From contig NW_026262637.1 in assembly GCF_021869535.1 (NCBI RefSeq), positions 15,748,001 to 15,812,000 of the forward strand: 64,000 nucleotides of DNA, given 5' to 3'. Source of the DNA: Mytilus californianus (taxonomy: Eukaryota). Numbering within the stretch: position 1 is the first letter of the stretch; each line of letters begins with the position of its first letter. This document shows positions 29-64,000 of this stretch, in pieces. The position numbers and the translations under genes were made by a program. Below the pieces are notes generated by a model, which did no database searches, had not been told where the DNA came from, and worked only from the letters and a program-made list of their open reading frames with translations.

Positions 29-2511
29 ATGATTTGAACTACACGTTGTACATAGTTATCATTTTAATAGTTTATATATTGAGAAAAATATCTTTACTCT
101 TATATTTAAAGGTTATTGCAATGAGACAAATACAACGTTCAAATAAGCATCATTGATTGTAACCATTAGGCTTGACTAGATTACCGAGGCGCTTACTAAT
201 ACATGTGACCAGTCAGGATTTAAGTAGACACAGCATAAAAATAGTTAGAGATTTTACATTTCGGTATATCCAAAACATAACTGAGCTTAATTTGAGTTTT
301 TAATTTGATACAGTTAATAGCGAAAACTGCTTTTCATTGTTTGCATCGTCTTAAAAGTCTACATCTGGATAACAACGTCTTAAAAGTGATACCCAAAGGA
401 ATATTCTACAACCTGAATTGTTTACAAGACCTTTAGATTGATAGCAATAAACTACAAAAACCATCAGGATGGCCAAATAAATGAAATGTCAAAAATCGTG
501 TCACTGAGATATCTGTCGTTCGACGTGTACCAAGATTTTAAATTTCCTAGCCAATGGTCTGATTTTAGTAATATAAGTTATTTGGAGGATGTTCACTAGA
601 TCAATAAATGTGCAATTCAACAAGAAAATGTTTGCTCATATAAAACTGATGTCAATAATGACTTTGTACTTACATATAGTTCCGTCCATATCGGATGATT
701 TTTTCGAATATTTTCCTAATTTAAATTCAATTGTATTAAAACTTGGTAATTATTTACCTAATAGTCCAATAGATCAAGTGTTTAGATCTTTTGGAGTTTA
801 AAGACATAGAAACGTGACAAATATCTTAATAACATCTAGTACATCTGACAATGAGTTTATCTTAGATTACGAACAAATGAAGTATTTATGGTCAATTTGT
901 TTGAAAAGATTGACATTGCAAGATTTATTCATAAAATCTATATCTAAATACGCACTGCAAAGATTTTCTGTTGAAAGCAAATGTCTTGAATATCTAGAAA
1001 TTTCACAAAATAGGATAATTGACCAAGCATTTGATTTGTTTGTCTTTATTGAGAACTTTGCAAATTAGAAAGTTTTCAAACTTATTAGAAATTGGCACCA
1101 TATCAGAAGTAAACGCTCGCACCCATCAAGATTGGACAAACTTACTTTCATTTTACCAAAATCTCTAGAAGAAATGTACATAGAAAGTTATATAGATAGT
1201 CATTGGTTTTTTGTACAATTTATTAACAGTTTAAATCTTCGAGTGCTAAGCTTGAAGGGCAATTACATCAAGTCATGTAAAGCAAGTTTTGAAGGAGGAA
1301 TAAATGTGGAGTACTATGATATGTCTGGATGGAGATGTGAAAAACTGTCTATCAATTTGTTGTATGGTTTCCCAAATTTGCAGACATTGAAAGCAAGTGA
1401 CTCACTTCTAGGACATGGATTTGAGAACAGCGCTAAAGGGGGGTCTTTCTTTAGTGAGACACTAAGAATGCGATATACTGACCTATCATTAAATGAAATA
1501 AACAGTATACCAAAAGGATTATTTTTGCAACCGTTGGAGCAGTTATTATCAGTGAACATGTCACACAACAATTTAACAATATTTCCATAATTTCTTTCTA
1601 TTATTAAACCATTAAAAATTATTGAAATGACCTATAACAGTATAACACACTTCGTAGACAATGAATTGAATCAAATTGAAAACCTAGGAGAAATAAATAT
1701 CTTCTTGAAAGGAAATCCCTTGCAATGTTCTTGTAAAGCTTTACAATTTTTAAAGTGGTTCGGTCAAACAAAACGAGTACCGGATATTTTGGATTTGAAA
1801 TGTGTAACCGAAAAGGCATCTCGTACGTTTTTAATTGAAGTTATTGCCGATCTGCGGAAATTTGAGATTTCTTGCAAAACTAAAGTCTGGTTGCCGGTTG
1901 CTGTCTTTATAACCTCCATTATCATAGTTGCTATGATATTAATCTTTATATGTTTTCGATATAAATATGCTCTTGAGTACTTTTTATTGAGATGGAAAAT
2001 GAAAATGAAAAATTACAAAAAATTGAAGCAGGAGTATACTTATGATACTTTTATATCATACAGTCATACAGATGTGGAATGGGTAAAACAGTTCTATGAC
2101 AAGTTGAATAGTATGGGGTTTGAATTATGTCTGGACGCCAAGACGTTTATTGCTGGTAACGGTATAGCGGAAAATGTTATAGATGCAATCGATTCCAGTA
2201 GAAAGGTTATATTTATTCTAACTCACAATTTCTTAAAGAGTTCTTGGGGGTCATATAAAATGGAATTGACACGTATGCATGCCTTTCAGAAAGGAAGAGA
2301 AGACATGGTGATTATTGTTGTAATGGATAAGATTATAGTTAGTGATATGCCAGAAATAATGAAAAGTATGTGGTTTAAAATTATATGTATTCAATGGCCA
2401 AACGGTGGCAATCTACCGTACAATACAGAGGAATGTTTTTATGAGAAGTTGAAAATTTCCCTAAAAAAGAAAGAACAAAACGAGGATGAAATCAGGGCTT
2501 TAGTTATCTAG
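29..2511 (+). pseudogene. Toll-like receptor pseudogene (LRR ectodomain disrupted; LRRCT-TM-TIR intact)
   Basis: Manual translation across frames gives an LRR N-cap and LRRs: IIDCNH/LGLTRLP...DLSRHSIKIVRDFTF, LNLSF/NLIQLIAKTAFHCLHRLKSLHLDNNVLKVIPKGIFYNLNCLQDL*IDSN, LRVLSLKGNYI, LSLNEINSIPKGLF. Frameshifts lie near 167, 300, 480 and 588. In-frame stops lie at 434-436, 799-801, 1066-1068 and 1588-1590. ORFs 589, 814, 1132 and 1627 share one frame. The start at 29 is tentative (signal-peptide-like stretch broken by a frameshift). Confidence 0.88.
1627..2511 (+). CDS. Intact C-terminal ORF of the TLR: LRRCT cap, transmembrane helix, TIR domain (294 aa)
   Basis: NPLQCSC LRRCT motif, hydrophobic VWLPVAVFITSIIIVAMILIFICF helix, TIR box1 YDTFISYS, box2 LCLDAKTFIAG, and AIDSSRKVIFILTHNFLKSSW. 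No lesions in 885 nt. Whether it is translated on its own is unknown. Confidence 0.7.
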   Translation: MTYNSITHFVDNELNQIENLGEINIFLKGNPLQCSCKALQFLKWFGQTKRVPDILDLKCVTEKASRTFLIEVIADLRKFEISCKTKVWLPVAVFITSIIIVAMILIFICFRYKYALEYFLLRWKMKMKNYKKLKQEYTYDTFISYSHTDVEWVKQFYDKLNSMGFELCLDAKTFIAGNGIAENVIDAIDSSRKVIFILTHNFLKSSWGSYKMELTRMHAFQKGREDMVIIVVMDKIIVSDMPEIMKSMWFKIICIQWPNGGNLPYNTEECFYEKLKISLKKKEQNEDEIRALVI

Positions 2512-3085: not shown

Positions 3086-3331
3086 AAATGTGAACTACCG
3101 AGTTTGAATTATCACTAGTTGTGTATTTACAATCTGCTTACCCTCCTGGAGCACCTGAGATAACCCCCGGTTTTTGTTTGGTTCGTGTTGATCATTCTTT
3201 AGTTTTCTATGTTGTGTTTTATACACTGTTGTTTGTATTTTTGTTTTTTTATTTTTTTTTGCCATGTCTTTGTCAGTATATTATCGACTTATGAGTTTGA
3301 ATGTCTCTTTGGTGTCTTTCGCCTCTCTTTT
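3086..3331 (+). mobile_element. 3' tail fragment of Penelope-like (Naiad-type) retroelement
   Basis: Contains ctgcttaccctcctggagcacctgag...gttcgtgttg...ttatgagtttgaatgtc...ggtgtctttcgcctctcttt, matching the tail that follows the RT remnant at 51110-52082. Confidence 0.7.
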
Positions 3332-3494
3332 TCAAAAGTAAAGGAGAACTACGATATAAGAGTTATAATTTGACCACTGAATATACAAAAATAGTGCCAT
3401 TCTTTAATCCTTTTAAATTATACACGTTTTATGTGTTTCTCAGTCCTGAGTGCTCTTGCGTTTATTTGTACTGTATTCCTGTCACGTAATGTTG

Positions 3495-4699: not shown

Positions 4700-5365
4700 A
4701 GATTCTACCACTGCATCGAGTGTGATACGATATTTATCCACTCGAGACAGTTAAATTTTCAAATTTAAAACGCGAGGCTCGCCGAGCGTTTTAAATATTT
4801 AAAATTTAACTGTCGAGAGTGGATAAATATCGTATTACACGAGATTTGGTGGTGGAATCTGTTTCTCTAATGATTTTCAAACAATACGCAGGCAAATTTA
4901 TTCCTTTTTTTTCGAATGATCTGCAAAAAGATGTGTTCTTTCTATGTGACGTCATCAGGCATGGTCGCCTTTTTTCATGCCGTCACAATAGGAAATTCAG
5001 AGGAAAGCAAGAAAATTCGACTTCATAATCGGATTTTAACCAGTGAAGAACTGAGATCAAACGAACCACACATTGATTAAATTTTTTTATACAATGGGTG
5101 CAGAAAGGGATAAATTGACGAAGAATTAGAGAAAGAACGAATACCTACGGCATATTTGTATTGATATATTATTATTGTTATATTATCGAAATCAACGGGA
5201 CAAAACGATCCTGTATCATACCCTCTCCTATATGCATAAGTCGAAAATGCAACCATCATTTCTCTGTTTTTGTTCATTTAACGTGTAAATTGATGTTTTT
5301 TATCTTTGCCGCATAATGTTCTTATGAAATAAATATGATATGGAAACTTAAATAGTGATATAATA
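4700..5365. mobile_element. Non-autonomous element with ~160-bp internal palindrome (Crypton-like, tentative)
   Basis: Arms 4700-~4773 and ~4786-4860 are inverted around a GC core cgcgaggctcgccgagcg. Downstream blocks (gaatctgtttctctaatgatt; tgattaaatttttttatacaatg.gtgcagaaagg) are shared with 56617-57019. The right boundary is approximate. Confidence 0.6.
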
Positions 5366-28572: not shown

Positions 28573-29778
28573 TTTTTGTCGAGCCTGCGACTTTTGTCGC
28601 AAAAGCGAGACATAGCGATCCTACATTCCGTCGGCGTCGTCGTCGTCGTCGTCGGCGGCGTCCACAAATATTCACTCTGTGGTTAAATTTTTTCAATTTT
28701 TTATAACTTTCTTAAACTATCCTGCATTTCAACCAAACTTGGACAGAAGCTTGTTTATGATCATAAGATAGTATCCAGAAGTAAATTTTGTAAAAAAAAA
28801 AATCCTGCTTATCCGTATTTTACTCATAAATGGACTTAGTTTTTCTGTCAGTTAATATTTACATTCACTCTGGTTAAAGTTTTTCAAATTTGTATAACTT
28901 TCTTAAACTATCCTAGATTTGTAACAAACTTGGACAGAAGCTTGTTTATCCGTATTTTACTCATAAATGGACTTAGTTTTTCTGTCAGTTAATATTACAT
29001 TCACTCTGTGGTTAAAGTTTTTCAAATTTTTATAACTTTCTTAAACTATCCTAGATTTGTAACAAACTTGGACAGAAGCTTGTTTATAATCATAAGATAG
29101 TATCCAGAAGAAAATTTTCTAAAAAAAAAAATCCTGTGTATCCGTATTTTACTCATATATGGACTTAGTTTTTCTGCCAGTTAACATAACATTCACACTG
29201 TGGTTAAAATTTTTCAAATTTTAATAACTTTCTTAAACTATCCTGGATTTGTACCACACTTGGACAGAAGCTTGTTTGTGATCATAAGATAGTATTCAAA
29301 AGTACATTTTGTTAAAACCTGTTTATCCGTATTTTACTTATAAATGGACTTAGTTTTTTCTGCCAGTTAACATTACATTCACTCTGTGGTTAAAGCTTTC
29401 AAAATTTTAATAACTTTCTTAAACTATCCTGGATTTGAACCAAACTTGGACAGAAGCTTGTTTATGATCAAAAGCTAGTATCTAGAGGGAAATTTGGTAA
29501 AAATATATTTCCTGTTTTTCCGTATATTACTTATAAATGGACTTAGTTTTATTCCAGTTAACATTACGTACAGTCTGCAGTTAAAGTTTTTAAAACATTT
29601 ATTAAATTAATCACAAACCTTCTTGGATTTTTACCAAACTTGAACAGAACTTCTTACAATCAAAAGATAGTATCTAGAGGAAAATTTTAAATATTTTTTT
29701 CCCCATTTTTGTTGAGCCTGCGACTAACAGCAAAAGTAGGCGAGACATTGGGTTCCGCGGAACCCTTACGAATTTTTT
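28573..29778. mobile_element. Helentron-associated (HINE-type) non-autonomous element with internal ~140-190 bp tandem array
   Basis: T-run flanks, gagcctgcgac...gcgagacat blocks at both ends, a (GTC)n microsatellite at ~28630-28660, five to six units starting attcactctgtggttaaa, and a perfect 3' palindrome gggttccgcggaaccc (29750-29765). Confidence 0.75.
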
Positions 29779-33100: not shown

Positions 33101-33435
33101 CAATTACTAAAATAATGAAATTATCTTCACTGTAAAACGTCATTTGTATTCAGAATGCCTTGTCTCTGCTTTGTTATATTCTGGTAAGAGTGGTTTATCT
33201 GTCTGGGCTGAAGTAAGCTAGAGACAAATGATAAAGAGGAATTAGGTGATCGTGTATCTTGTTTTTAAAGTACACAACCGATTGCTTGTTCTTGAAATTA
33301 AGATGTTAATTGACTTGTAAACATATATAAGTATTATAATGACTTTGTCTTCGGTACAGAGAAGTAGGAAAATAACTTTTGAGCGCAAGTATCGTCTATC
33401 ATGAACGTCATCATTTAGGGAAACGAATTAAATCA

Positions 33436-33702
33436 GGCAAGAATTATTAATAGGCAATAATTATTAATAGGCAAGAGTTATTAATGGGCAAGAATTTTCA
33501 ATAGGCAAGAATTATCAATAGGCAAGAATTACTAATAGGCAAGAATTATCAATAGGCAAAAATTATTTATAGACAAGAATTATCAATTATAGGCAAGAAT
33601 TATCAATAGGCAAGAATTATTAATAGACAAGAATTATCAATAGGCAAGAATTATTAATAGACAAGAATTATCAATAGGCAATAATTATCAATAGGCAAAA
33701 AT
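33436..33702 (+). repeat. 17-bp minisatellite (GGCAAGAATTATCAATA), ~15.5 copies
   Basis: Direct head-to-tail units with point variants and no spacers; one unit carries a 3-nt insertion. Confidence 0.95.
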
Positions 33703-34090
33703 CACTAACATCTATTTCCATTTCAAGTGACTCACGGGTGACCATAATTGTGGTTGTAGTAAATCATACACGGACTCAACAGACGTTGGTCATCTTCAAA
33801 TAATTTATTTGCAGGCATAGGTTTAATAAATATAACACTTAATAAATTTCGTGCATTTGAAGCGCTTTTCTGTGTTAATCAGACACGTTGTATTATTCTT
33901 ACTTGTGAAAATTGTAGAACCGATAATCAGGAACCAAAGTTCTTCCATATTTTATGCTCACTTTCTTTGTTCATATGTTTACTGTGAAAATCAGTATACT
34001 GCGCAGATAGATTTAATAGAATAGCAAAATTAGAAAAGAACTTCAATCACTCTACGATGCTCAGTTATCCTACATCGTAATATGCTGTAT

Positions 34091-35746
34091 TTATTCAACT
34101 TTATAAATTGCACTGCGTGATCTCTCTGAGCATACTAACAACAATTTATTCTCTTTATCAAGACTTATCGCCCTTGGATTGCTGATACCATCTCCAACCA
34201 ATGGAATTTGTTTGAACTGCTTCCCATTAGGTGATATAACGACGACGTTGTTAGAATTTAGTCCGGCCACGAAAACATTGCAATTGTTGTCGACTGATAT
34301 TCCGCTTGGATTTCGTAGAACAGTTTCGTCCTTGAATTTCCAAAGAGCAGAACCATTGATATCGTAACAGATAACAGTGTGTTCCTGCCAGTTCGAATAG
34401 AAAATCTTATCTTCAGATCCCACTACATAAGATTGAAAAATCGGGTCTCCTACATTTAGCGTGGTAATTCTCTCTGTGCGCAAATCCATTTTCTTGACTT
34501 TAGATTTATCCGTTGTATAGATAATTGATCCTTTAGAATGTGAAATACCAAAACAGTAACCTTCAGCCCTTACGCGTTTAATAACTTCTTTTCGTTCCTT
34601 ATCAATGAATGTTATTTCGGCATCATCAGTGACTGCAATCTTTTTATCATTTATACACGTGACATCATACGCCATTCTTAGTTGTAGTTTCTTATTCACA
34701 GTACCGTAAGGATCTAGAAATACAACATAGAAATCACCTGTAATAATAATACCACCTGTTGGTAGTAATAAACACCCCGTTACGCTCATGCCTTCTGGTA
34801 ACGGCAGTTTTCGTAGTAAAGTAAGTTTGACACTGTTGATTGTAGGTTTTTGTGTAACCATGAACATTTGTATTTCCTTATCTTTTCGTTTAACATACGT
34901 TTTGCTCGCGGGTAAAGTTTTTACAGAAAAAGAACCGAGTTTGATATCACCCCTATCTATGTTCGCAACCATTATATCATCTAAACAGAAAACAATGTTT
35001 TTCAAAGCGCCTCGTGTTTGTAGAGAAGTGATAGATTCCTCTGCTTTCTGCAAGTCCGTTTCAAACTTTTTCGATGCTAAAAACACCTGCATATTGGATG
35101 CATTTTCTGTCATAAAAGATAAACTGTCCTTAAATTCTCCCGCACATTGTTGGTGTTCAGAGAGCTGGTCGATAACTTTATGGATTTCTGTTTTATGTTT
35201 TAATAACGCAGTTTTTCGTTGTGCTTCTAGAATATCCAACTGTTCATTTAACTGTTTTCGTATCTGTTTGATTCTGTTTTCAATTTGATTGCTTTCGGAA
35301 GTAAGCTCTCTTATGTTCTGTCTTTTTTCTTTGACCATATATTCACAAAAGGAATAGATATCTTTGAAACCCTCTGACAACTGCTCAGTCAAAAATGATC
35401 TTTTGGTATCTTTTAGAAAATCATCAACAGCTGGCAGACTAGTACAGTGACTGTGTAAAGGATCAATACACTTTCTGCAACATAACTGCTCATGAGTAAT
35501 GCAGTAATTCTGAAACGGTGCGTTATGTTGTTCGCAGTGTGAGCTCAATTTCCTGATGATAGGAGGTAGTTTCGAGTAATTATCCATTGATATGACCATA
35601 TGTTCTCGTGTTTTCCTAGCGCTGCTATGGTGATCTGCACAGTTTGAACAAAATGCCTCTTCACAGTCATGACACCACACCACCGATTCCTGTTTGATAC
35701 CTCTGAAGTCACAAGCTTCGCAGAAAGTAATCGTATTTGACGTCAT
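34091..35746 (-). CDS. RING-less TRIM-like protein: B-box1, B-box2, coiled coil, NHL/beta-propeller-like C-terminus (551 aa, single exon)
   Basis: CEAC...WCHDCEEAFCSNCADHH...H (B-box1), CEQH...YCITHEQLCCRKCIDPLHSHC (B-box2), a heptad-rich middle, and repeats such as LRNPSGISVDNNCNVFVAGLNSNNVVVISPNG and ISNPRAISLD. The ORF is uninterrupted. Confidence 0.92.
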   Translation of the reverse strand: MTSNTITFCEACDFRGIKQESVVWCHDCEEAFCSNCADHHSSARKTREHMVISMDNYSKLPPIIRKLSSHCEQHNAPFQNYCITHEQLCCRKCIDPLHSHCTSLPAVDDFLKDTKRSFLTEQLSEGFKDIYSFCEYMVKEKRQNIRELTSESNQIENRIKQIRKQLNEQLDILEAQRKTALLKHKTEIHKVIDQLSEHQQCAGEFKDSLSFMTENASNMQVFLASKKFETDLQKAEESITSLQTRGALKNIVFCLDDIMVANIDRGDIKLGSFSVKTLPASKTYVKRKDKEIQMFMVTQKPTINSVKLTLLRKLPLPEGMSVTGCLLLPTGGIIITGDFYVVFLDPYGTVNKKLQLRMAYDVTCINDKKIAVTDDAEITFIDKERKEVIKRVRAEGYCFGISHSKGSIIYTTDKSKVKKMDLRTERITTLNVGDPIFQSYVVGSEDKIFYSNWQEHTVICYDINGSALWKFKDETVLRNPSGISVDNNCNVFVAGLNSNNVVVISPNGKQFKQIPLVGDGISNPRAISLDKENKLLLVCSERSRSAIYKVE

Positions 35747-43574: not shown

Positions 43575-43765
43575 CGCACCCTTTTGAAGCACCGTCATCT
43601 CCTGTTTTTGATTGGGTTCGTCCTGGTATGTCCAGATTTTTATGTAGTGTTTTGTGGAATTGTGGTTCGTTTGTTCATCGTTTTCGATTTTGTGTGCCTT
43701 TGAGTTTTCAGTTTTGCTTCGAATTAAGAGATTTGATTATCCCTTGGTATCTTCCGCCTCTTTTT
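43575..43765 (+). mobile_element. Degenerate Penelope-like (Naiad-type) 3' tail
   Basis: gcgcacccttttgaagcacc...gggttcgt...gattatcccttggtatcttccgcctcttttt. Confidence 0.55.
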
Positions 43766-43785
43766 GATGACTAGTTGATTATATA

Positions 43786-47295: not shown

Positions 47296-48020
47296 TTCAT
47301 ATTTTACAGATTGAAATTCTTTAGGTTTGCAGCTTTTGGGCTAATGAAAAGATCTTTCATTAAGTGAGAGGTTTAGCTAGCTTTAAAACCAGGTTTAATC
47401 CACCATTTTCTACATCCGAAAATGCCTGTACCAAGTCAGGAATATGACAGTTGTTATCCATTCGTATGATGTGTTTGAGCTTTTGATTTTGCCATTTGAT
47501 TAGGGACTTTCCTTTATAAATTTTCTTCGGAGTTCAGTATTTTTGTGATTTTACTTTTTTCATGTGTACTGAATTTAAGAGCAGATTCTATCATTGGTTC
47601 TTGTGCATGTATTGTTTGCCAACTTATTTTAAATATTAGAATGTTATGAAATTATACAATTATTCTTATCGGTCATGTAACTGCAATAAGTTTGAGAAGA
47701 GATTCCTACATAATAAATTTTTTTTCGAATTTTAACTTAAAAATTAAGGTAAACAGAAGTATTTATTGTTATTCAATATATGATCGTTCAATATTCTTTT
47801 AATTCCGAAATACTTGCAAAAATAGCGTGCCTAAAAGAATACAACTTGATATATGTTTTACCTTCCAAACACTTGTTCCAGGTATATTTATTTTCGACGA
47901 CTTCTCCATCTTTTTCAATGCCTCATACTGACTTCTGGCAACACAAACTTTATCTCCCGGAAAGGTTTTCTCGTCAGAGGTGTTCTTCAATGATAATATG
48001 AAACAGGGTAAACATGTATT

Positions 48021-48498
48021 GCTTTTGGTCTTTTTCTTTTTATTTTGCCATGGCATTGTCAGTTTATTTTCGACTTATGAGTTTGAATGTCCGTTTGGTA
48101 TCTTGCGCCTCTCTTTTACAAATTTTTCCGTAGCAGAAACAGTTGCGGCAGTATTTGAAGGCATTTTGGATCATTCTCTATATATATCGCTATCTATATC
48201 TATTATTATCTTTATTTTTGAACCAGCCATACTACTTTGTGATATCCCTGCTATTTTTATACTAAGTGAAGTTGTACATTGTTTATTCGGTCTGTAAATA
48301 CTGTCCTTTCAACTTAATACCTGTATAATGCTAATAAAAACGATAAAGACATTTTCAATTTGATATTGGGGGACGAAGTCTTCATCACAATAGAAAATCT
48401 CTCAGTATCTACATAGCATCATTAACATCAACATCAAATACATTGATACGGAACCAAAAATGCACAACGTTTTATTCTGCCAATACCTCCGCGTATTC
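48021..48498 (+). repeat. ~480-bp direct duplication (second copy 51975-52461): PLE tail plus ~380 bp of flank
   Basis: Long near-identical blocks visible by eye, e.g. gtagcagaaacagttgcggcagtatttgaa and gatattgggggacgaagtcttcatcacaatagaaaatctc. Confidence 0.9.
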
Positions 48499-51109: not shown

Positions 51110-52082
51110 AAATTCTCTGAAACTGACATTATCAAGATGTTTGATTCGTTATATATTTGTTACGTTTGAAAAACATGTTTTTCAAAAAACAGTCGGCATT
51201 CCCATGGAAAACAAAATGTGCTCCTCTTCTTGCCGACTTGGTACTTTATTCATATGAGGCTGACTTCATACAGGAGCTTCTTAGGAAAGAAGCTAACATT
51301 ATCCTTTGACTTCATTTTGCGCTATTCAGATGATGTCCTCTAACTAAATAATTCAAAGGTCTGTGACTATGTTGAACGCAACTATCCTGACGATCTTGAA
51401 ATAAAGGATCCAACAGATACAATTAAGTCAGCTTCATATCTTGACTTACATCTAGGAATTGACAATGACGGTCAGTTGACACAAAACTTAACGACAAGGG
51501 AGATGATTTCAGATTCCCAATAGTGAACTTTCCATTTCTATGTAGCAACATTCAAGCAGTGCCTTCATATTTAATAATATCTCTCAGGGCTTGCGTTTCC
51601 TATCATGATTTCCTTGATAGAGGGTTGCACCTCACAAGAAAGCTATTAAACAAAGAGTTCCAAGTAGTGAAGTTGAAGTCATCCTTTCGAACATTTTACG
51701 GACGCCATCACGAGTTGGTTGACTGTTATAGGATATCTGTTTCACAGATAACGATGGATATGTTTCAATCGTCGTAACCACAATCCTGCCCTCATTTTCT
51801 CCGAATGTGACCTACCGAATTAGGATATCATCGGGTCTGTAATTGAGCAACAATACGGGTAAAACATTTGGAGCAGGATCTGCTTACCCTTCCAGGGCAC
51901 CTGAGATCAGCCCCGGTTTTTGGTGGAGTTCGTGTTGTTCAGTCTTTAGTTTTCTATGTTGTGTTATGTATGCTGTTGTTTGTCTTTTGGTCTTTTTCTT
52001 TTTATTTTGCCCAGTCATTGTCAGTTTATTTTCGACTTATGAGTTTGAATGTCCCTTTGGTATCTTGCGTCTCTCTTTTACA
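51110..52082 (+). mobile_element. 5'-truncated Penelope-like retroelement (Naiad-type, C-terminal RT), pseudogenised
   Basis: Frameshifted translation gives ETDIIKM, VFQKTVGIPM, CAPLLADL.LYSYEADFIQEL, RYSDDVL (YxDD), SASYLDLHL, DKGDDFRFPIVNFPFLCSNI and RKLLNKEFQVVKLKSSFRTFYGRHHELV. No GIY-YIG follows the RT, consistent with the N-terminal-EN Naiad architecture. Confidence 0.8.
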
Positions 52083-54127
52083 TTTTTGTTCCGTAGCAGA
52101 AACAGTTGCGGCAGTATTTGAATGCATTTTGGATCATTCTTTATATATATCGCTGTCTATATCTATTATTATCTTTATTTTTGAACCGGCCATACTACTT
52201 TGTGATACCCCTGCTATTTTTATACTAAGTGAAGTTATACATTGTTTATTCGGTCTGTAAAATACTGTCCTCTCCACTTAATACCTGTATACTGCTAATA
52301 AAAACGATAAAGACATTTTCAATTTGATATTGGGGGACGAAGTCTTCATCACAATAGAAAATCTCCCAGTATCTACATAGCATCAGTAACATCAATATCA
52401 AATATATTGATACGGATCCAAAAATGCACAACGTTTTATTCTGCCAATACTTCCGCGTATTCGCAATGTTTTCGAGAGAAGGCTATTCAGGATTTTATCG
52501 TAAAATTTTTATATTTTATTTATAACAAAATAAGATGACAACAAATCAATAAAAATGAATTCAATGGCATTCTGATTTTAGGAGGAAGATCCATAATCCA
52601 AAATTGTTCTGTCAGTATTTTCAAGATGTGAGCATTTTGCGATTTAAGAGACAAGAAACAAAATTGCTGTGTCGTGGAAATCGCACGTACATGGGATTAA
52701 TACAGCACAGTTATACACGTTATTGCTATATATTTATCGGAAATTATTGTATAACAGGAAAGCGATTATTGTACGACGTCAATAAGTCAATTATTTCAAC
52801 ATATGGGGTCAAGTGTCGAAGAATCTTAATTAGTGACAAGGTATACATGGTATATGCAATCCCATCATAAAAACAGGAAAATGTGTCTGTTTCCGCCAAC
52901 TTCCTGTATAAAATATTAATTCAAGATAGACAAGTACACAAGTACTTTAAATCGAAAATAAGAAGAACGTGCTCCGTTGGTAAGTCGAGTAATGTATTTT
53001 TAAGGTTGATGATATTTATAAGGAGCAAAAATCGTTGGGTATTTCGTTTATGTTTATAACTGATTATCTTTAAATAGATGACGTGTAATGTCATTGGTCC
53101 TACGAAATGTAGTTTAGTTGTGTTAGTTATTAGATTCAGAATCATTTGATTAGTTTGAACTTGAACATTTTAGAAATAGTTGCTTATAAAAGTCATGGAC
53201 TCTTTCTTGAGCACCTCATATCCCCTCGGTTTTTGGTGTTTTTGGTATCTTTCACTTATTTTTCACAGGTATAAAAGTATAACAAAAATACCGAACTCCA
53301 AGGTAAATTCAAAAAGGGAGAAGTCTATAAAAACTGACAAAATCAAACGGAAAGAGTGGAAAACAACTGACTTGGTGCAGACATTTGAAGAAGAAAATGG
53401 TGGGTTAAATCTGGTTTTATAGCTTGCTAAACCTTATATGTATAATATGCCTGATATCAACGGGATTTGCAAAATTACTTCTTTCCAAATATTTTGTGTC
53501 AATATTAATTGTTCTAATTTAAAATTTGATATTCTTGAATAATGTCCTCTACAAGATCAAGTTTTTATGGAAAATGACACAGTAGTAGGGCCTTGTGGGA
53601 AGTCGGTATCAAGAGTTTTGCCAAAAGAGTAATACATAACATATACGCAAGAAAATCGACAACATCATAATCAAAGGACAAACGACGATCAGACCAACAG
53701 TCCAATAAAAACCATACTTCCACCGTATTTTGAGTAACCGAAATCATCCGTCGTGAATAAATAGAAGTTATTAACGACCACCAATACCCTATTTTTCAAA
53801 AGTCTAAACATCAATATGATGTAACAAAGGCAAGAACAAACAGATTTCTGACTTGGGGCAGGCGCATGTTCATGTGGCAGGGTTAAAGTAGCCTTTGATT
53901 TTTGAGAGATTATAAACCCTTCCATTTCAATCTTAACCATGTTTGAATTGGAACAACAAAGTCAACAGAATGGATGTAGGAAAAACATCAGTACAAAAAC
54001 AGTCTAACACCACCGTCGCAATAAATAAAAAAGTAAAACATATATTCATTATTACTACTGTATTAAATTAAAGCAATATAAAGCATGTAAAATATTTCTT
54101 AAGTCTGACAATAGATTATTTACTTAC

Positions 54128-56616: not shown

Positions 56617-57019
56617 AGATTATTACATTGATACCAGTGGATTATCGGATTTATCCAATCGAGATAGTTAAATTATCAATTTTAAAGTCTGAGCCTTGGC
56701 GAGGACTTTAAAATTTATAATTTAACTATCGAGATTGGATAAATCCGATAATTTACGAGTAACTATGTAAGAATCTGTTTCTCTAATGATTAAAAAATAC
56801 ATTTTCATTTTTTGTTAAACAAAAACCCCCTTCGAGTGCCTTCCACATTTCACAAAGTTGTCAATTTCATTAACACCTGTTAGCATATTTTGAGCTGATA
56901 AAGGTTATGACCCTTAAATTCATCCAATCATCTTCTGAGATCACCGGCAACCACACGTTGATTAAATTTTTTTATACAATGAGTGCAGAAAGGTATAAAT
57001 TGTCAAAGAATTAGAGAAT
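56617..57019. mobile_element. Palindromic non-autonomous element (same family as 4700-5365), truncated at the retrotransposon junction
   Basis: Palindrome ~56617-56779 around ctgagccttggcgagg, with shared downstream blocks; homology to the first copy stops abruptly at gaattagagaa. Confidence 0.65.
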
Positions 57020-57216
57020 ATTTTATACCGGGAGATCTGGTCAATATTTACATTTGTCTTATATTATTGTTGCACAGGTGTAATATTTTATACCGGGAGA
57101 TCTAGTCAGTATTACATTTGTCGGTCTAGATTATTGTTACACACCGTAAATAATTTACATCCATATATCGCGTGTAAACTAAGCCATATATTGACATAAT
57201 ACAATATAAAGCAATC

Positions 57217-59113
57217 ATGTCGAAAGTGGTGAATATAAACACGGAAGTAAAGAAGAACTGATTACAATTAAAGATATTGGGGAGGCAAGAGCTAAACTTA
57301 TTATTGCTGCAAGGAAAGATAAGGGAAAATTAACATTTGAGGATTTGAAATTAATTCAAGGTCTTCCAAATACTATGTGGGACCCTCTCGTAGCAGCAGG
57401 TCGAATTATTTTTGAAAACAGAGAAGAAGTTGATGACAGTGCGGATAAGAAAAAACAAATCGAGAAGTTGAAAACAGAACTTGTCAATCAAAAACAAGAT
57501 GCTGAACAGGAGATAAAAAAAATTCAGAACAATTTTGACACACGGTTTTCAATTGCAACTCAAGAAAAGGCAACCATACAACATGAATTAAAACATCAGA
57601 TAAAAGATTTGCAAAATGCATTGGAAGGGGAAATGGTGGAAAAGAATGAGTATGCTAAATTGATAGAAGAAATAAAACAAAAGTATGTAATGGAGTCATC
57701 AGCTCTGCAGGAGTTCAATCAACAGGAAAAGGAAAAATTGCTGATCAAGGTTGATCAAGACAAACTGGAAAAACTTGAAAAACAAAAAGAACAAATGGAT
57801 TTGTTAGAAATAGAAAGACGGGAAATGAAAGATATGATGGAATCCATAGAAAAGACGTTTGAAAGTGAGAAAACTGTATTTATGGAAAAGACAAATCAGT
57901 TGATAACTAAATTAAATGAAGAGCGGGCAATACAGGCACTCACCATAGAACGCGAAAAATTTGCAAGAAAGAAATGTGACCGTCTTGAAGAAGAAATAAA
58001 ACATTTACAAATGTCCAAAAGAGTTACAGAAACAATAGTACAGCATGAAAAAAATCCTAAAACCAATATACAAGCTACAGAAGCTTTAAAAGTAACTGAC
58101 ACGTCAAACACTGTCCAAATACCTGAGGAGAACAAACAACCTAACAGTAGTGGTCCATCACCACAAAGGCTTCCGTGCTATGATGGGAAGACAGAATGGA
58201 AACCCTACTACATGCAATTTATTCATTTTTCCAATCGGTACAGGTAGGATATTAAGCAAAGATTAGACAGACTTATAGAATGTTTGCGTGATAAAGCACT
58301 GAAGTTCTAAAGTACTCGTCCGCCATCAGTCCAAAATGATTTTGTACTACTTTCAGAAAAGATGAATCAACGTTTCGGAAATAAAGACCTACCCTATACC
58401 ATCAGAAGGCAATTACAGGAAGTAAGACAAAATATTGATGAAACAGTAGAGGAGTTTGCAGAAAGGGTCCAGGAAATGGCTACTGATGGGTACGGACCAA
58501 ATACACCTGAAAAAGTCGTTGAAACCATAAGCGTAGATGCATTTTTAAAGGGCTGTAGCGACAAGAAAGCTACTCTTTTCGCTATGGAGAAGAATCCAGT
58601 TACACTAGATACTGCTCTACAGTGTGATAAGAGTTCAATACACAATCAAAGAATTGTGCTCGGCAAGAGACAAAGGTTGTCAAAAGAGTTCATTTTGACT
58701 CTGATACTGATTCTGAAACAGAATCTTCAGAATTTGCTGTTCGAGCATTAAAAAGGTATGATAGGAGATCTTCAACATCATACGACAGGAGACAGACTCC
58801 ATCTTCTGATTGGCAGTCCTCAGTTGAGTCGCGTCTTAAGAAGACCGAACAGGACATTGGTGACATTAAAGATGATGTTTCGAAAATTCTGATGGCTGTT
58901 TCCAGACAATCTATTAGTAGTCCGAATCGAAGGTCCATATCAACAGGAAGAAGTCCAGATAGGTCTTATGACGTGTGTTTTCGTTGTCATGAAAAAGGGC
59001 ATTATGCAAGGAATTGCCCTAATACCACAGCCGTTGCCAGAATTCCAAGATCATCATCACCAAAACCAATTGAAAGAGATCAACATTTAAACACCCAAGG
59101 ACTGAAGAAATAG
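57217..59113 (+). pseudogene. gag: gag: N-terminal HhH, long coiled coil, capsid-like region, CCHC knuckle
   Basis: ATG at 57217, frameshifts near 57242 and 58667, in-frame stops at 58245-58247 and 58308-58310. Joins ORFs 57345, 58362 and 58892. Confidence 0.85.
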
Positions 59114-59128: not shown

Positions 59129-62100
59129 ATAATCCACATACAGGTCGTCCACCAACAACTGAAATTGAACAAATTGTGAGTGTAACCGGCGATGCTTGTA
59201 CTCATAATCTTGTTTCAAACATCAATAAGCAAGGACCATTCAACTCAAACTTGGATGTGACTCGTTCCACAACAATTACCGGTTGCTCTGGTACTTGTGA
59301 GACGAGCCACTACAAGAAAGAGGATGTCCCTACAGTCATTAGTCAATTTAAAGTGAAAGAAGTTTCAATGTATGGAGATGATACCAAATATAAACCCATT
59401 AATTTAGTACTTCAAATAACTATAAATGGTAAACAGGCTGATGCAATTGTTGACACTGCAGCACAGGTAACGGTTATCAATTTTGATTTTGCTAAATCCT
59501 TGAATCCTGCAATTGAAGTTAAAGAAACAGTTATATTGAAAGGAGCAGGGAAAGACAACAGCATCAGTGCAAAATATATAGATAGAGTAGCCATCAAGGT
59601 TGGCAAAACTGAAACAAGATGGAGGGTCATAGTTGCCGATATAACAGATCCGGTCATTTTAGGACTAGATGTTTTACAACACATAAAAGCTGTTATAAAT
59701 TTAGTTGATTTGACCCTAACAGTTGATGGCGAAAAACTTCCAGCTACAGTTTTCAATGCAAAAAACGACAAGATAAAGATATGTAGGGTGAAGTTAGGGA
59801 AAGATGTAATAGTTCCACCCCAATCACAAGTTCATCTACAGGCTAAATTGAGTGGAGATTGTGAAAATGATATTATTGTCCAACCTACAACAAACTTGAA
59901 GGGGTTGCTTATGCCAAATATATTGAGTACAGCTGAACATCAGGTACCAGTGTCTTTGAGAAATGTCACTGATAAATATATTACTTTAAAGAAGAACTGT
60001 AATATTGGAACGGCAGTGGAGGTAGCAGAAGTCATTGAAGAAGCTGAAGATTGTCCAACACTCACAGTTAGAAAACTTGAACAATTTGATTCAGGAAAAG
60101 ATATATTAAGCTGTATTCCAGAACATTTGCAGGACATGTTTATGAAATCAAAGAAAAATCTATCGTTCGATCAATCCAGAGAATTTGCCAAACTGTTAGT
60201 GCATTTCCAAGATATTTTTGCAAAAAATGAACTTGATATTGGACACTTTACCAAAATAAAACATCGCATTGATACTGGGAATGCAGCTCCGTGTTAAAGA
60301 ACGTTTGCGGCGTACTCCTTTAGGATTCGAAAAAGAAGAGGAGGCTCACTTGCATGATTTATTGAATAAAAAGATTATTCAGCCGTCTTCTTCTGCGTGG
60401 GCAGCTGCACCAGTGCTTATTCGTAAGAAATGTGGAGCCCTGAGGTACTGCATTGATTTCAGAAAATTAAGATCTTTGACCAGAAAAGATGCATTTCCTC
60501 TCCCTCGTATTGAGTCTTGTTTGGACACCCTTAAAGGAACACAGTTTATGTCCTGTATGGATATGGCATCAGGCTATTATCAAGCCGAAATTCATGAGTC
60601 TGACAGACATAAAACAGCCTTCCTTACCAAGTATGGTCTTTTTGAATACATCAGATTAAGTTTTGGTCTCTGTAATAGTCCAGCATTTTTTCAGAGGATG
60701 ATACAGCTGATTTTGACTGGTTTAACTTGGAAAGAATGTCTCGCATATCTAGATGATGTTATTGTATTAGGTAAAGATTTTAGTAACCATCTTGAAAACC
60801 TGTATAAAGTTTTGCAACGTTTTAAAGACAATAACTTGAAGCTTAAACCAAGCAAATGTTCATTCTTTCAGACAGAAGTCCTGTTTTTAGGAAAATTTGT
60901 TAACAGAGACGGTATATCTATTAACCCAGAGAGTCGAAATACCATTCTGAAATCGCCTGATGTATATTGTGATTATTGTTGTAGAGCACAGAGAAGTTGG
61001 GGACAGTTTGAAACTGATATTGATGACGTCATTCCACTTGCTGTGAGGAAAGTAGTAGAGACTGGTGTCAACAATGCTCAAACAGACCACTGCAACTGGA
61101 TGGAAGGCAGATCACCCAGAGACATTATTGCAGAACAGGAGAAGGATTCAGACTTATGCAGGATTATACAGTGGTTAAAGAAAGATCAAGTACCCAGTGA
61201 AATAGCTTTACAGCTATGCAGTCCAGCTGCAAAACATTGGTGGAGCTGTAATTCGCAGCTGAAATTTAAGGATGGAGTTCTTGTCTATGAGTGGCTGGAC
61301 ATCGTGCCACCAAAATTACTTGTCATGGTTCCTAAATCGATGAAACAAGAAGTCTTGATAAATTGTCACAATACAAAAATAGCTGGACATTTTGGACAAC
61401 AGAAAACTTACAACAGACTTAAGTCAAGATTGATGTGGCATGGTATGAGGCAAGAGGCATTAATTCATGTTAGAACTTGCGAAGTATGTAACATCAATAA
61501 GAAGCCAAATAGAAAAGCAAAGGGAGCTCTTGGACAATTCCAGGCTGTTTCCCCCATGGAATGAATTCATATAGACATTTTAGGTCCACTTAAAGAAAAT
61601 GCAAAAGGAAACAAATGTATACTTGTTGTAATAGACCAGTTCACCAAATGGGTCGAATTTTATGCTTTACCTAATCAAAATGCACAAACTGTTGCTACAA
61701 CATTAACTGATAATTTTATATCAAGATTTGGATGTCCGTCCATAATACACTCAGATCAGGGGAAAAATTTAGATGGAAATCTATTTCGTGAACTCTGTAG
61801 TCTTCTTGAAATTCCATAAACAAGAACCACGTCATATCGTTCTTGCTGCAACGGTCAGGTGGAAAGATATAACAGAACTATCATTCAATGTATTCGTTGT
61901 TTTTTAAAAGGAAAGCAAGGAAACTGGGATCAGAATTTACAGCTGTTAGCAGGAGCCATTAGATCAACTGAAAACAGAAATACAGAGTATTCCCCTAATA
62001 TGCTAATGTTTGGACGAGAAGTGCAGCAGCCTGTGGATTTGCTAATGGGGACCTCACACGCTAGGGGTAACAATAAGCAACCGTCTGAATATATTAAAGA

Positions 62101-62886
62101 TCTAAAGCAGGTAATGGAAGAAGTTTACTCAATTGTCAGGGAGAATATCCAGTCTGCACAATTCAGACGGAAAAGAGATTACGATACCAAGCTTTTTCAA
62201 AGAACCTATGACGTTGGAGATGCTGTTTATAGAATAGATTCTGCTACTAAAGTAGGGGAGAGAAAAAACTGAGGTTACCTTGGCAGGGGCCATATCTAGT
62301 CATCAAAGTCATTTCTCCGGTTTTGTACAGAATCCAAAAGCGCAAGAAAGCTCTCGTTGTGCACCATGATAAATGGAAACCCTGTGAGGACAGAGTTTTA
62401 CCAAAATGGCTTAAATATGCGAGACAAAGGCTTTCACTAGGCGTTCCTCAAGAGGATGAGGATTTTGATATTATGATACAAGATCCAGATATTGGCCATG
62501 ATCTCTCGGTGTTTTTCCCAAATGAAAATCCTGACAATGATCTGACCATAATATGCTCCGGTAGTTCTGGAAATTATGATCAGATCACTAATGGAATTTC
62601 TGTTCAAGATGTTGATGTGAATAATCAGGTTATAGATACCCCAGGAAGTATTCATAGCCCTGTTGTTGATGCTGAAGCTATTAGTTCATGCCCCTTTTGT
62701 GTAACCGGCAGTGCTGGTAAAAAGGAGTGTGAACATCATTATAGGGTGGTATCAGATTTAAACGACTCATTTAGGGACAGTGATTTTCTCTATGGAGTGC
62801 AGGATTCAGAAGAAAACGAGTATGTCGTTCGTTCGAGGAATCGTCCGAAATATCTGGATGATTATGTTACGACGTATGTTGACTAA
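59086..62886 (+). pseudogene. pol: pol: aspartic protease, reverse transcriptase, integrase; RNase H absent
   Basis: PR DTA motif; RT KDAFPLPRI, MDMASGYYQ, FGLCNSPAFFQ, LAYLDD; IN HNTKIAGH..CEVC, IHIDILGP, HSDQG, VERYNRT, PWQGPY. Frameshifts near 60291 and 62265; stops at 61562-61564 and 61817-61819. Confidence 0.92.
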
Positions 62887-62982
62887 TTGAACAGTTTGTG
62901 TGTAAATATTTTATGTTGTGTTGTAGCTGTGTAAATATATTATTTTATGTTGTAATTGTGTATTTGCAGCTTTATAAGTAGA

Positions 62983-64000
62983 ATGGCGTCCATTAAACGC
63001 GAACTGGAATACGATGTAGGGGAAGAGATCGAGTTAGAAGGGAATAGGACGGTTGTGATTATGGGGAAGGAGATGGAGGTGCTGGATGAAATGGTTGAGG
63101 AAGATCCAAAGGCTCCGCAATGTCCACTGTGCCCACTTAAGGCCAGACACGCATTAGAGAAACACCTTCCTTGGTACTATGCTCCGCTGACTGCATGCTG
63201 GAGCTGTAACAAGCAAGAAAGAAGATTAGAGTACCACGGCAAGGAACATCATAGAGCTGAGGAATGTTTCCTGTGGGATGAGGATGAGTATGGGGAAGTT
63301 GGGTTCAACTTATGAACGGGTTGTTTAGGGCATTGGCAGAGGTCAAGAAAGTGGAGTATCCTGAAGGGTTAATGGAGTATGTAAGTGAAATAATGACAGG
63401 AGTGAAAACAAACAGAAATTTCACAGAGCAAGAACTGTCTTTAGTCATACTGTTTAATCGTTTGAATGATTATCCTGTTCTACAATGAAAGAAATTAAAA
63501 TCTAAGTCCGTCTACAGGCTTCATTCCTTAATCCACTGGAAAGTTTTGGTTATTGTCATCTCAAAATTACAGTATGATCAGCAACATTGGCTTTAAACAT
63601 TCGAAGAATATAAATCTGCAACAGGAATTTCATTAGGACCTTTGGGAAGCAAACTTTCTGGACCAACTTCAATTACTGACTCCCATGTCCATTTGGACAC
63701 GCTCTTGGTTCGTACCAGTTGTTCTGGTTTCCATGAGCTGTCCGACTTTGGAACTCGGGAATACTACAAACGTGCCTGATGTTTATGGTGGCTAATTTCT
63801 GTTTTCCTTCATCCTGGCCAAATTCTTCACAAAGAACAGAATTGCGCAAAACCCCGTCCATTTCAGTTTTGGTATCCACCCACGCACCGTCAATTCTTCA
63901 TCCTTGTCACGTTTACATAGACATCTGACCGATTTAGAGTACATTGTCCAGTCCTCCAGGACTGTTGCCATTGGAGAGTGTGGACTGGATACTTCCGATA
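62983..64000 (+). pseudogene. tatD: Extra ORF3: two C2H2-like zinc fingers, helical linker, TatD-family metal-dependent nuclease (partial, runs off the window)
   Basis: Stitched translation gives ITDSHVHLD (motif 63678-63698), VANFCFPSSWP, HFSFGIHP (GIHP 63871-63882) and VAIGECGLD (63964-63990), the first three conserved TatD blocks in the correct order. Frameshifts near 63298, 63750-63778 and 63850; stops at 63486-63488 and 63594-63596. Confidence 0.88.

What the first reader, a model, noticed from the sequence alone, without database searches (positions are those of the whole stretch)
62983..64000. Ty3/Gypsy retrotransposon carrying a TatD nuclease as a third ORF
Seen: 96 nt after the pol stop, on the same strand, a frameshift-fragmented ORF has DSHVHLD, FGIHP and VAIGECGLD in order, and it is decayed like gag and pol. 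Known: HxH, GxHP and GExGLD are the hallmark metal-binding blocks of TatD TIM-barrel nucleases (3'-5' exonuclease/AP-endonuclease activities), and the post-pol slot in Gypsy elements normally holds env or nothing. Inference: the element family has captured a TatD nuclease as an accessory gene. Possible roles are processing RNA:DNA intermediates, handling abasic or deaminated cDNA, or clearing cytosolic cDNA that would trigger innate DNA sensing. I do not know of a description of this arrangement, but I cannot check the literature.
Basis: partly seen in the sequence, partly recalled or inferred. Interest (0 to 1): 0.9.

Follow-up and report, generated by a model that had tools for sequence, protein, structure and literature searches.

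The report
Mussel Gypsy retrotransposon with TatD gene
A dead copy of a mussel (Mytilus) Ty3/Gypsy retrotransposon carries, right after pol, a third gene for a zinc-finger plus TatD-type nuclease; the same pairing recurs at nine or more other loci in three mussel species, and I found no published description of it.

Summary
The pol stop ends at 62886. An ATG at 62983, 96 nt later on the same strand, opens a reading frame that carries DSHVHLD, FGIHP and VAIGECGLD in order. Its last stop-free piece scores above Pfam's cut-off for TatD_DNase. This copy is broken and runs off the window.

The window comes from a Mytilus genome. The pol-to-ORF3 adjacency recurs at nine other loci in M. galloprovincialis, M. 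edulis and M. coruscus:
- six gene models join pol parts to ORF3;
- two pol/TatD pairs have consecutive accession numbers on one contig;
- one further pair shares a contig.

pol and ORF3 diverge in parallel. Nothing after pol repeats sequence upstream of gag.

Intact relatives are 466-533 aa. They have a disordered N-terminus, two C2H2-like zinc fingers, a helical domain and a complete TatD barrel whose metal-binding columns are invariant. They form their own clade, apart from TATDN2 and bacterial TatD.

The proposed mechanism, a nuclease acting on reverse-transcription intermediates, is inferred. No description was found in the paper library.

The parts
56617..57217 (+). Stretch upstream of gag: candidate 5' LTR/leader, limits unresolved. 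It contains a palindromic repeat head (56617-56776) and a TATA-like motif near 56995.
   Evidence: A roughly 400-bp similarity to 4732-5133 with the same internal spacing, and hairpin arms I4/I6. No second copy exists downstream within the window, so LTR limits cannot be set.
57218..59113 (+). gag: coiled-coil region, faint Retrotrans_gag match, CCHC zinc knuckle. It is broken, lying in several stop-free pieces in more than one frame. The start codon is provisional.
   Evidence: The N-terminal part of gene model P0001 matches the coiled-coil region.
59176..62886 (+). pol, given as one part. Domains: aspartic protease 59413-59682, reverse transcriptase 60419-60892, integrase zinc-binding domain 61328-61504, then integrase core and C-terminal tail to the stop at 62886. 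Breaks: two frameshifts, at least two in-frame stops, one internal deletion that removes the RNase H region.
   Evidence: Pfam: PF13975 1.1e-11, RVT_1 1.2e-25, Integrase_H2C2 4.3e-17. Break counts come from tblastn of relatives P0179, P0184, P0175, P0182, P0183 and P0294. Relatives carry PF17917/PF17919 RNase H.
62887..62982 (+). 96-nt pol-ORF3 spacer. It holds a 29-nt unit repeated 2.2 times (62899-62962) and ends in a T-rich tract plus CAG (to 62969), which looks like a splice acceptor 13 nt before the ATG.
   Evidence: Four M. galloprovincialis gene models (P0001, P0003, P0006, P0015) enter ORF3 at the equivalent point just upstream of the start methionine. There are two stops in the pol frame, so simple read-through is unlikely.
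62983..64000 (+). ORF3, given as one part and running off the window: acidic N-terminus, two C2H2-like zinc fingers (63121-63252), helical domain, and TatD nuclease domain from 63678 to the window end (first three of the TatD motif blocks). Breaks in the visible part: three frameshifts and two in-frame stops.

Best explanation
The region 62983-64000 is the first two thirds of the third gene of a Ty3/Gypsy-type LTR retrotransposon family of Mytilus mussels. It is not a neighbouring host gene. In intact relatives the gene encodes a protein of about 470-530 aa. That protein has a disordered acidic N-terminus, two C2H2-like zinc fingers, a helical domain, and a complete TatD-family TIM-barrel nuclease with all metal-binding residues conserved. 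The gene lies 96 nt after pol on the same strand. It is probably translated from a spliced subgenomic RNA that uses an acceptor just upstream of its ATG, as env is in env-carrying Gypsy elements (inferred). The most likely job (inferred, about 0.35) is that of an accessory nuclease guided by its zinc fingers to the element's own reverse-transcription intermediates. There it would trim RNA from RNA:DNA hybrids, or 3' ends or abasic sites of the cDNA, alongside the element's RNase H rather than replacing it. The copy in this window is dead: gag, pol and ORF3 are all broken. The confidence figure below is for the structural claim, that ORF3 is an integral gene of the element family.
For: Shown:
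- TatD_DNase scores above Pfam's cut-off on the window piece.
- The window aligns colinearly to intact P0055 from its residue 1.
- Five gene models on five contigs join the pol tail or integrase to the ORF3 N-terminus (P0001, P0003, P0006, P0015, P0022).
- M. edulis model P0294 has protease, integrase zinc domain and full TatD in one protein. It is 81% identical to the window's pol part and 65% to its ORF3 part.
- Two pairs have consecutive accessions on one contig: VDI00835 (TatD) with VDI00836 (integrase), and CAG2227663 (tatD) with CAG2227664 (RT-integrase). P0183 (RT-RNase H) shares a 96,454-bp contig with the ORF3 halves P0319 and P0320.
- pol and ORF3 identities to the window fall together: 90/76, 81/65 and about 50/42 %.
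- No repeat of the stretch after pol occurs upstream.
- The metal-binding columns are invariant or nearly invariant across 32-35 sequences that share only about 25-55% identity.
- The AlphaFold model of P0055 has pLDDT 80, and Foldseek gives TM 0.83 to YcfH/TatD structures.
- The family profile hits YcfH at 9e-39 and TatD at 3e-34.
- Several intact copies at 90% identity or more lie on different contigs and in different species.
Background: TATDN2 degrades the RNA strand of R-loops (PMC10711561). NCBIfam names E. coli TatD a 3'-5' ssDNA/RNA exonuclease.
Against: - A 3' LTR downstream of ORF3 was not seen, because the window ends inside the gene, and the 5' LTR is not delimited.
- Adjacency in other genomes rests on gene models and accession order, not on DNA that I read.
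- RefSeq annotates some family members as ordinary genes (TATDN2, YcfH-like), so some copies could be stand-alone or domesticated.
- A search aimed at long pol-TatD fusion proteins found none beyond P0294.
- There are no expression data, and no evidence on substrate or on packaging into particles.
- The family is not closer to TATDN2 than to bacterial TatD by a clear margin, so transferring TATDN2's RNA specificity to it is weak.
Confidence: 0.8

Rival explanations
1. ORF3 is an integral gene of the element, but its nuclease works against the host or against competitors rather than on the element's own replication intermediates. For example, it might remove cytosolic nucleic acids that would trigger sensing, or degrade silencing RNAs.
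For: The structural evidence is the same as for the best explanation. ORF3 is a separate protein, not part of Gag-Pol, so nothing ties it to the particle. A TatD-family nuclease is used in a bacterial anti-phage system (QatD), which the family matches weakly and below the cut-off.
Against: There is no signal peptide, targeting evidence or expression data. It is as untested as the favoured mechanism.
Confidence: 0.2
2. The zinc-finger-TatD genes are a host multigene family or a separate mobile unit. Gypsy copies lie next to them through insertion preference or repeated transduction, so ORF3 is not inside the element.
For: RefSeq names some members as ordinary genes on chromosome-scale contigs. 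Most family members were retrieved as stand-alone proteins. The 3' LTR was not seen.
Against: The 96-nt spacer has no LTR-like repeat. Order and strand are constant, and gene models enter ORF3 at the same point in four copies. Adjacency holds in lineages only about 42% identical in ORF3, with pol diverging in parallel. ORF3 in the window is decayed to the same degree as pol.
Confidence: 0.07
3. Chance adjacency, or a one-off capture of the host TATDN gene at this locus only.
For: None beyond the fact that only one locus lies in the window.
Against: Nine further loci occur in three species. The family forms its own clade apart from TATDN2. It is multi-copy.
Confidence: 0.02

Closest known systems
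Env-carrying Ty3/Gypsy elements (errantiviruses and their metazoan relatives; PMC13524379)
   Same: An LTR retroelement with a third reading frame directly after pol on the same strand. An acceptor-like site lies just before it, suggesting a spliced subgenomic message.
   Different: The third gene is a soluble zinc-finger-TatD nuclease, not a membrane fusion glycoprotein. Neither the paper library nor BFVD (the library of predicted viral protein structures) shows a TatD protein in any retroelement or retrovirus. The only BFVD match is a giant-virus protein.
Retroelements with an extra nucleic-acid enzyme: the second RNase H of retroviruses and plant Athila/Tat elements (abstract of PMC9040795). 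From my own knowledge, untested here: dUTPase in some retroviruses and LTR retrotransposons, and the hydrolase ORF of Ngaro elements.
   Same: An accessory enzyme acting on nucleic acids or nucleotides has been added to the gag-pol core and kept over long periods.
   Different: The fold is different (a TatD amidohydrolase-type TIM barrel). It is a separate ORF rather than a pol domain, and it is preceded by its own zinc fingers.
Vertebrate TATDN2 (a 3'-5' RNA nuclease that degrades the RNA of R-loops; PMC10711561)
   Same: It is the best-scoring named eukaryotic relative: about 28-30% identity over the whole TatD domain. The metal-binding columns are the same.
   Different: The family is not orthologous. 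It forms a separate clade, has a different N-terminal region, is multi-copy, and is linked to pol.
Bacterial YcfH/TatD and human TATDN1/TATDN3 (solved structures 1YIX, 6L25, 1J6O, 4P5U, 2Y1H, 8EFG)
   Same: The same fold (TM about 0.75-0.84 on the target) and the same motif blocks.
   Different: All NCBIfam equivalog scores fall far below their cut-offs. The solved proteins lack the roughly 260-residue N-terminal region.

Membership tests
TatD-family metal-dependent nuclease (Pfam PF01026) | Profile score above the curated cut-off | tested here: met
   The window piece scores 33.2 bits against a cut-off of 27. Intact relatives score 120-158 bits over profile positions 1-253.
TatD-family metal-dependent nuclease (Pfam PF01026) | Conserved metal-binding blocks (HxH, GxHP, GExGLD, then two His and an Asp later in the barrel) | tested here: met
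   The first three blocks are present in the window; the later ones lie beyond the window end. In relatives all these columns are invariant or at least 90% conserved.
TatD-family metal-dependent nuclease (Pfam PF01026) | TIM-barrel fold of the TatD type | tested here: met
   The model of relative P0055 has pLDDT above 90 in the barrel. Foldseek gives E 3e-16 and TM 0.83 to 6L25 and 1J6O. This was tested on a relative, not on the broken window copy.
TatD-family metal-dependent nuclease (Pfam PF01026) | Intact reading frame and nuclease activity | tested here: not met
   The window copy has three frameshifts and two in-frame stops. Activity of intact relatives cannot be tested with these tools.
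Ty3/Gypsy (Metaviridae-type) LTR retrotransposon | gag with CCHC, then protease, RT, RNase H and integrase, with RT before integrase | tested here: met
   The order is confirmed. RNase H is missing from this copy through a deletion but is present in relatives.
Ty3/Gypsy (Metaviridae-type) LTR retrotransposon | Two long terminal repeats enclosing all genes, with a primer binding site and a polypurine tract | tested here: inconclusive
   No repeat pair lies in the window, because the 3' end is beyond base 64000. The primer binding site and polypurine tract were not identified.
Ty3/Gypsy (Metaviridae-type) LTR retrotransposon | No LTR between pol and the extra ORF (the ORF is internal) | tested here: met
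   The spacer is 96 nt. Nothing in 62887-64000 repeats any sequence in 1-57400 (best hit 16 nt, E 0.05).
Host TATDN2 orthologue | Groups with TATDN2 in a tree, is a single- or low-copy gene, and has no linkage to transposon genes | tested here: not met
   It forms a separate clade in a neighbour-joining tree without bootstrap. Many paralogues occur in each Mytilus genome. It is adjacent to pol at ten loci including the window.
Env-carrying Gypsy (errantivirus-like) | The third ORF encodes a membrane fusion glycoprotein | tested here: not met
   ORF3 is a zinc-finger-TatD protein.

The most novel reading that the evidence does not exclude
An old, still partly intact clade of mussel Gypsy-type retrotransposons has kept a zinc-finger-guided TatD nuclease as a working third gene, under selection for catalysis. 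This would be the first TatD-family enzyme known as a retroelement accessory gene, and a natural case of a retroelement adding a second, non-RNase-H nuclease to its replication cycle.
Probability: 0.5. Interest if true: 0.7.

Novelty: new variant of a known kind. Interest (0 to 1): 0.62.

Why it matters
Accessory genes of LTR retroelements are few, and each has been informative about replication or about conflict with the host. Examples are env, dUTPase and a second RNase H. A TatD nuclease with its own zinc fingers, kept across lineages that now share only 25-45% identity, would add a new enzyme class to that list. It would also point to a step in reverse transcription or host conflict that mussel elements handle differently. 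There is a practical side as well. Dozens of Mytilus 'tatD', 'TATDN2', 'YcfH-like' and 'YabD-like' gene models are probably transposon genes. They inflate apparent TatD gene-family expansions in bivalve genome annotation.

Tried and rejected
I did not try it again.
LTRs around ORF3 in complete copies therefore remain unseen.
- 'TatD replaces RNase H' is rejected. Relatives' pol proteins carry PF17917/PF17919, including P0183 on the same contig as an ORF3 copy. The gap in the window is a deletion private to this copy.
- Read-through from pol into ORF3 is rejected. The two are in the same frame, but two stops separate them.
- The short piece carrying DSHVHLD gave no Pfam hit on its own, being too short.
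- phmmer of the 66-aa TatD piece against PDB sequences gave only a marginal YcfH hit. The family profile was needed.
- A search aimed at long pol-TatD fusion proteins (region 606-1106 of P0294) returned four proteins, none with pol domains.
- No LTR pair was found around the element in the window.
- The 400-bp repeat upstream of gag, shared with 4732-5133, could not be assigned either to an LTR or to an unrelated palindromic repeat.
- Six literature searches found no paper linking TatD to retrotransposons or to mussels. Repbase cannot be searched here.
- The finding's suggestions to read the gene across its frameshifts and to build a consensus protein were not followed. Pieces were searched separately.
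- dN/dS was not computed, because no DNA of intact copies was at hand.
- Taxa of the more distant family members (P0014, P0019, P0028, P0037, P0043, P0045, P0083) could not be named.

Full report
**1. What is in the sequence**

The window is AT-rich (31% GC), has no N, and comes from a Mytilus mussel. Every named close protein match is from M. galloprovincialis, M. edulis, M. coruscus or M. trossulus. The window also holds mussel-typical genes:
- an LRR-TIR receptor gene at 438-2511;
- a B-box/beta-propeller ORF at 34091-35746.

From about 57.2 kb to 62886, the + strand carries a degraded Ty3/Gypsy-type element:
- gag, with a coiled coil and a CCHC knuckle;
- aspartic protease (PF13975, 1.1e-11);
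- reverse transcriptase (RVT_1, 1.2e-25);
- the integrase zinc domain (4.3e-17) and an integrase tail.

The pol stop ends at 62886. An ATG at 62983 follows after exactly 96 nt. Downstream of it, DSHVHLD, FGIHP and VAIGECGLD are read in order but in different frames. The last stop-free piece passes Pfam's cut-off for TatD_DNase (33.2 bits against 27).

**2. State of the copy (counts only)**

- ORF3, as far as the window shows it: three frameshifts and two in-frame stops.
- pol: two frameshifts, at least two in-frame stops, and one internal deletion that removes the RNase H region.
- gag: several pieces in more than one frame. I had no gag relatives to count against.

ORF3 is thus decayed to the same degree as the rest of the element. 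This fits one insertion ageing as a unit.

**3. ORF3 is a defined protein family**

I searched the first stop-free piece of ORF3 against 1.8 billion representative proteins. It found 49 relatives. Thirteen of these carry a TatD domain, and five carry integrase or pol-tail sequence.

Intact members are 466-533 aa, with more distant members reaching about 690 aa. The closest intact one, P0055 (533 aa), aligns from its residue 1 to the ATG at 62983 and on, colinearly, to residue 373 at the window end (66% identity). About 160 residues of the gene therefore lie beyond the window.

An alignment of 32 family members shares only about 25-45% identity with P0055. It nevertheless keeps two groups of columns invariant or nearly so (which includes TATDN2 and bacterial TatD):
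- two Cys-Cys...His-His groups;
- every TatD metal-binding block.

An AlphaFold model of P0055 has mean pLDDT 80. It shows:
- a disordered N-terminus (residues 1-64);
- two beta-beta-alpha zinc fingers;
- a helical domain;
- a TIM barrel with pLDDT above 90.

Foldseek places the barrel with YcfH/TatD structures (E 3e-16, TM 0.83). The family profile hits YcfH at 9e-39, TatD at 3e-34, TATDN3 at 1.5e-26 and TATDN1 at 1e-19. All NCBIfam equivalog scores are below their cut-offs.

In a neighbour-joining tree of the TatD domain (no bootstrap), the family is its own clade. It sits apart from vertebrate TATDN2 (with a Penaeus protein) and from bacterial TatD. TATDN2 is the best named eukaryotic match, at 28-30% identity.

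**4. Is it part of the element?**

The evidence I could gather is at protein and record level.

(a) Five gene models on five different contigs join the pol tail or integrase to the ORF3 N-terminus:
- P0001, P0003, P0006 and P0015 from M. galloprovincialis;
- P0022 from M. coruscus, which is more diverged.

The four M. galloprovincialis models enter ORF3 at the same point just before the start methionine. This point matches the T-rich tract plus CAG that ends 13 nt before the ATG in the window.

(b) M. edulis model P0294 (1106 aa, named 'tatD') holds protease, integrase zinc domain and a full TatD domain, in that order. It is 81% identical to the window's pol part and 65% to its ORF3 part.

(c) Two pol/TatD pairs have consecutive accession numbers on one contig:
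- VDI00835 (TatD, P0075) and VDI00836 (integrase, P0184);
- CAG2227663 (tatD, P0072) and CAG2227664 (RT-integrase, P0186).

Reading consecutive numbers as neighbouring genes rests on how such records are numbered. That step is inference.

(d) P0183 (RT-RNase H) lies on the same 96,454-bp contig as the two halves of an ORF3 copy.

(e) Identities to the window fall together for pol and ORF3: 90/76, 81/65 and about 50/42 %. This is expected if the two have been inherited together.

(f) In the window, nothing in 62887-64000 repeats anything in 1-57400 (best match 16 nt). No LTR therefore lies between pol and ORF3. This test is weakened if the 5' LTR is missing from the window.

Together this makes ten loci in three or more species and at least three or four ORF3 lineages. 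Chance adjacency and one-off capture are excluded. A host gene family that merely attracts insertions is unlikely. A 3' LTR after ORF3 remains unseen.

**5. How it probably works**

Shown:
- the architecture of the protein;
- conserved catalytic columns;
- several intact copies at 90% identity or more on different contigs and in different species.

Inferred:
- *Expression.* It probably comes from a spliced subgenomic RNA. ORF3 is in the same frame as the pol tail, but two stops separate them, so read-through is unlikely.
- *Function.* TatD enzymes are metal-dependent 3'-5' exonucleases on single-stranded DNA and RNA (NCBIfam name). TATDN2 removes the RNA strand of R-loops (PMC10711561). I therefore favour a nuclease that its zinc fingers bring to the element's reverse-transcription intermediates, at about 0.35. 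The main alternative, at about 0.2, is action on host or competitor nucleic acids.
- *Not a replacement for RNase H.* Relatives' pol proteins have RNase H.

**6. Comparison and novelty**

The layout is that of env-carrying Gypsy elements, but the cargo is a nuclease. BFVD, the library of predicted viral protein structures, holds no TatD-like protein from a retroelement or retrovirus; its only match is a giant-virus protein.

Six searches of the paper library found nothing linking TatD to LTR retrotransposons or to mussels. A 2026 survey of third ORFs in metazoan Gypsy elements does not mention nucleases. Repbase could not be searched.

I rate this a new variant of a known kind. In public annotation these genes pass as 'tatD', 'TATDN2', 'YcfH-like' or 'YabD-like'.

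Noticed in passing
window 438-2511 (+): A Toll-like-receptor-type gene: LRR pieces followed by a transmembrane stretch and a TIR domain (TIR_2, 1.2e-16). It lies in several ORFs in different frames, so it either has introns or is a pseudogene.
   Followed up: partly
window 34091-35746 (-): An intact 551-aa ORF with an N-terminal B-box zinc finger and a C-terminal beta-propeller, the TRIM-like type expanded in bivalves.
   Followed up: partly
window 48015-48498 and 51977-52462: Direct repeats of about 485 bp, 91-96% identical and 3.96 kb apart, with no long ORF between them. This may be an LTR pair of a non-autonomous element or a local duplication. More diverged copies lie at 3229-3339 and 43664-43774.
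   Followed up: no
window 4700-5133 and 56617-57018: A repeat of about 400 bp with a palindromic head (hairpin arms 82-86% complementary) and a 70-nt block 93% identical. One copy lies directly upstream of gag. It could be part of the 5' LTR or an unrelated foldback repeat.
   Followed up: partly
window 62899-62962: A 29-nt unit repeated 2.2 times inside the pol-ORF3 spacer. It runs into a T-rich tract plus CAG that looks like a splice acceptor.
   Followed up: partly
window 33375-33753 and 28670-29565: A tandem array with a 17-nt unit, and an array of units of about 190 nt.
   Followed up: no
proteins P0008, P0009, P0021 (ENA contigs of 186,700 and 316,256 bp): The zinc-finger plus helical module of ORF3 also occurs, up to three times in tandem, in long proteins (1.4-1.9 kaa) without any TatD domain; P0008 and P0021 also carry a B-box. 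It is therefore a separable module, possibly of host origin.
   Followed up: partly
proteins P0178, P0209: Close relatives of this element's RT-RNase H-integrase are deposited as proteins of a bacterial MAG (Candidatus Thiodiazotropha endolucinida, a clam symbiont). This is probably host retrotransposon DNA binned with the symbiont.
   Followed up: no
protein P0330 (1304 aa, Logan): A TatD domain combined with a CXXC zinc finger (PF02008) in one long protein. This is another TatD fusion of unknown origin.
   Followed up: no
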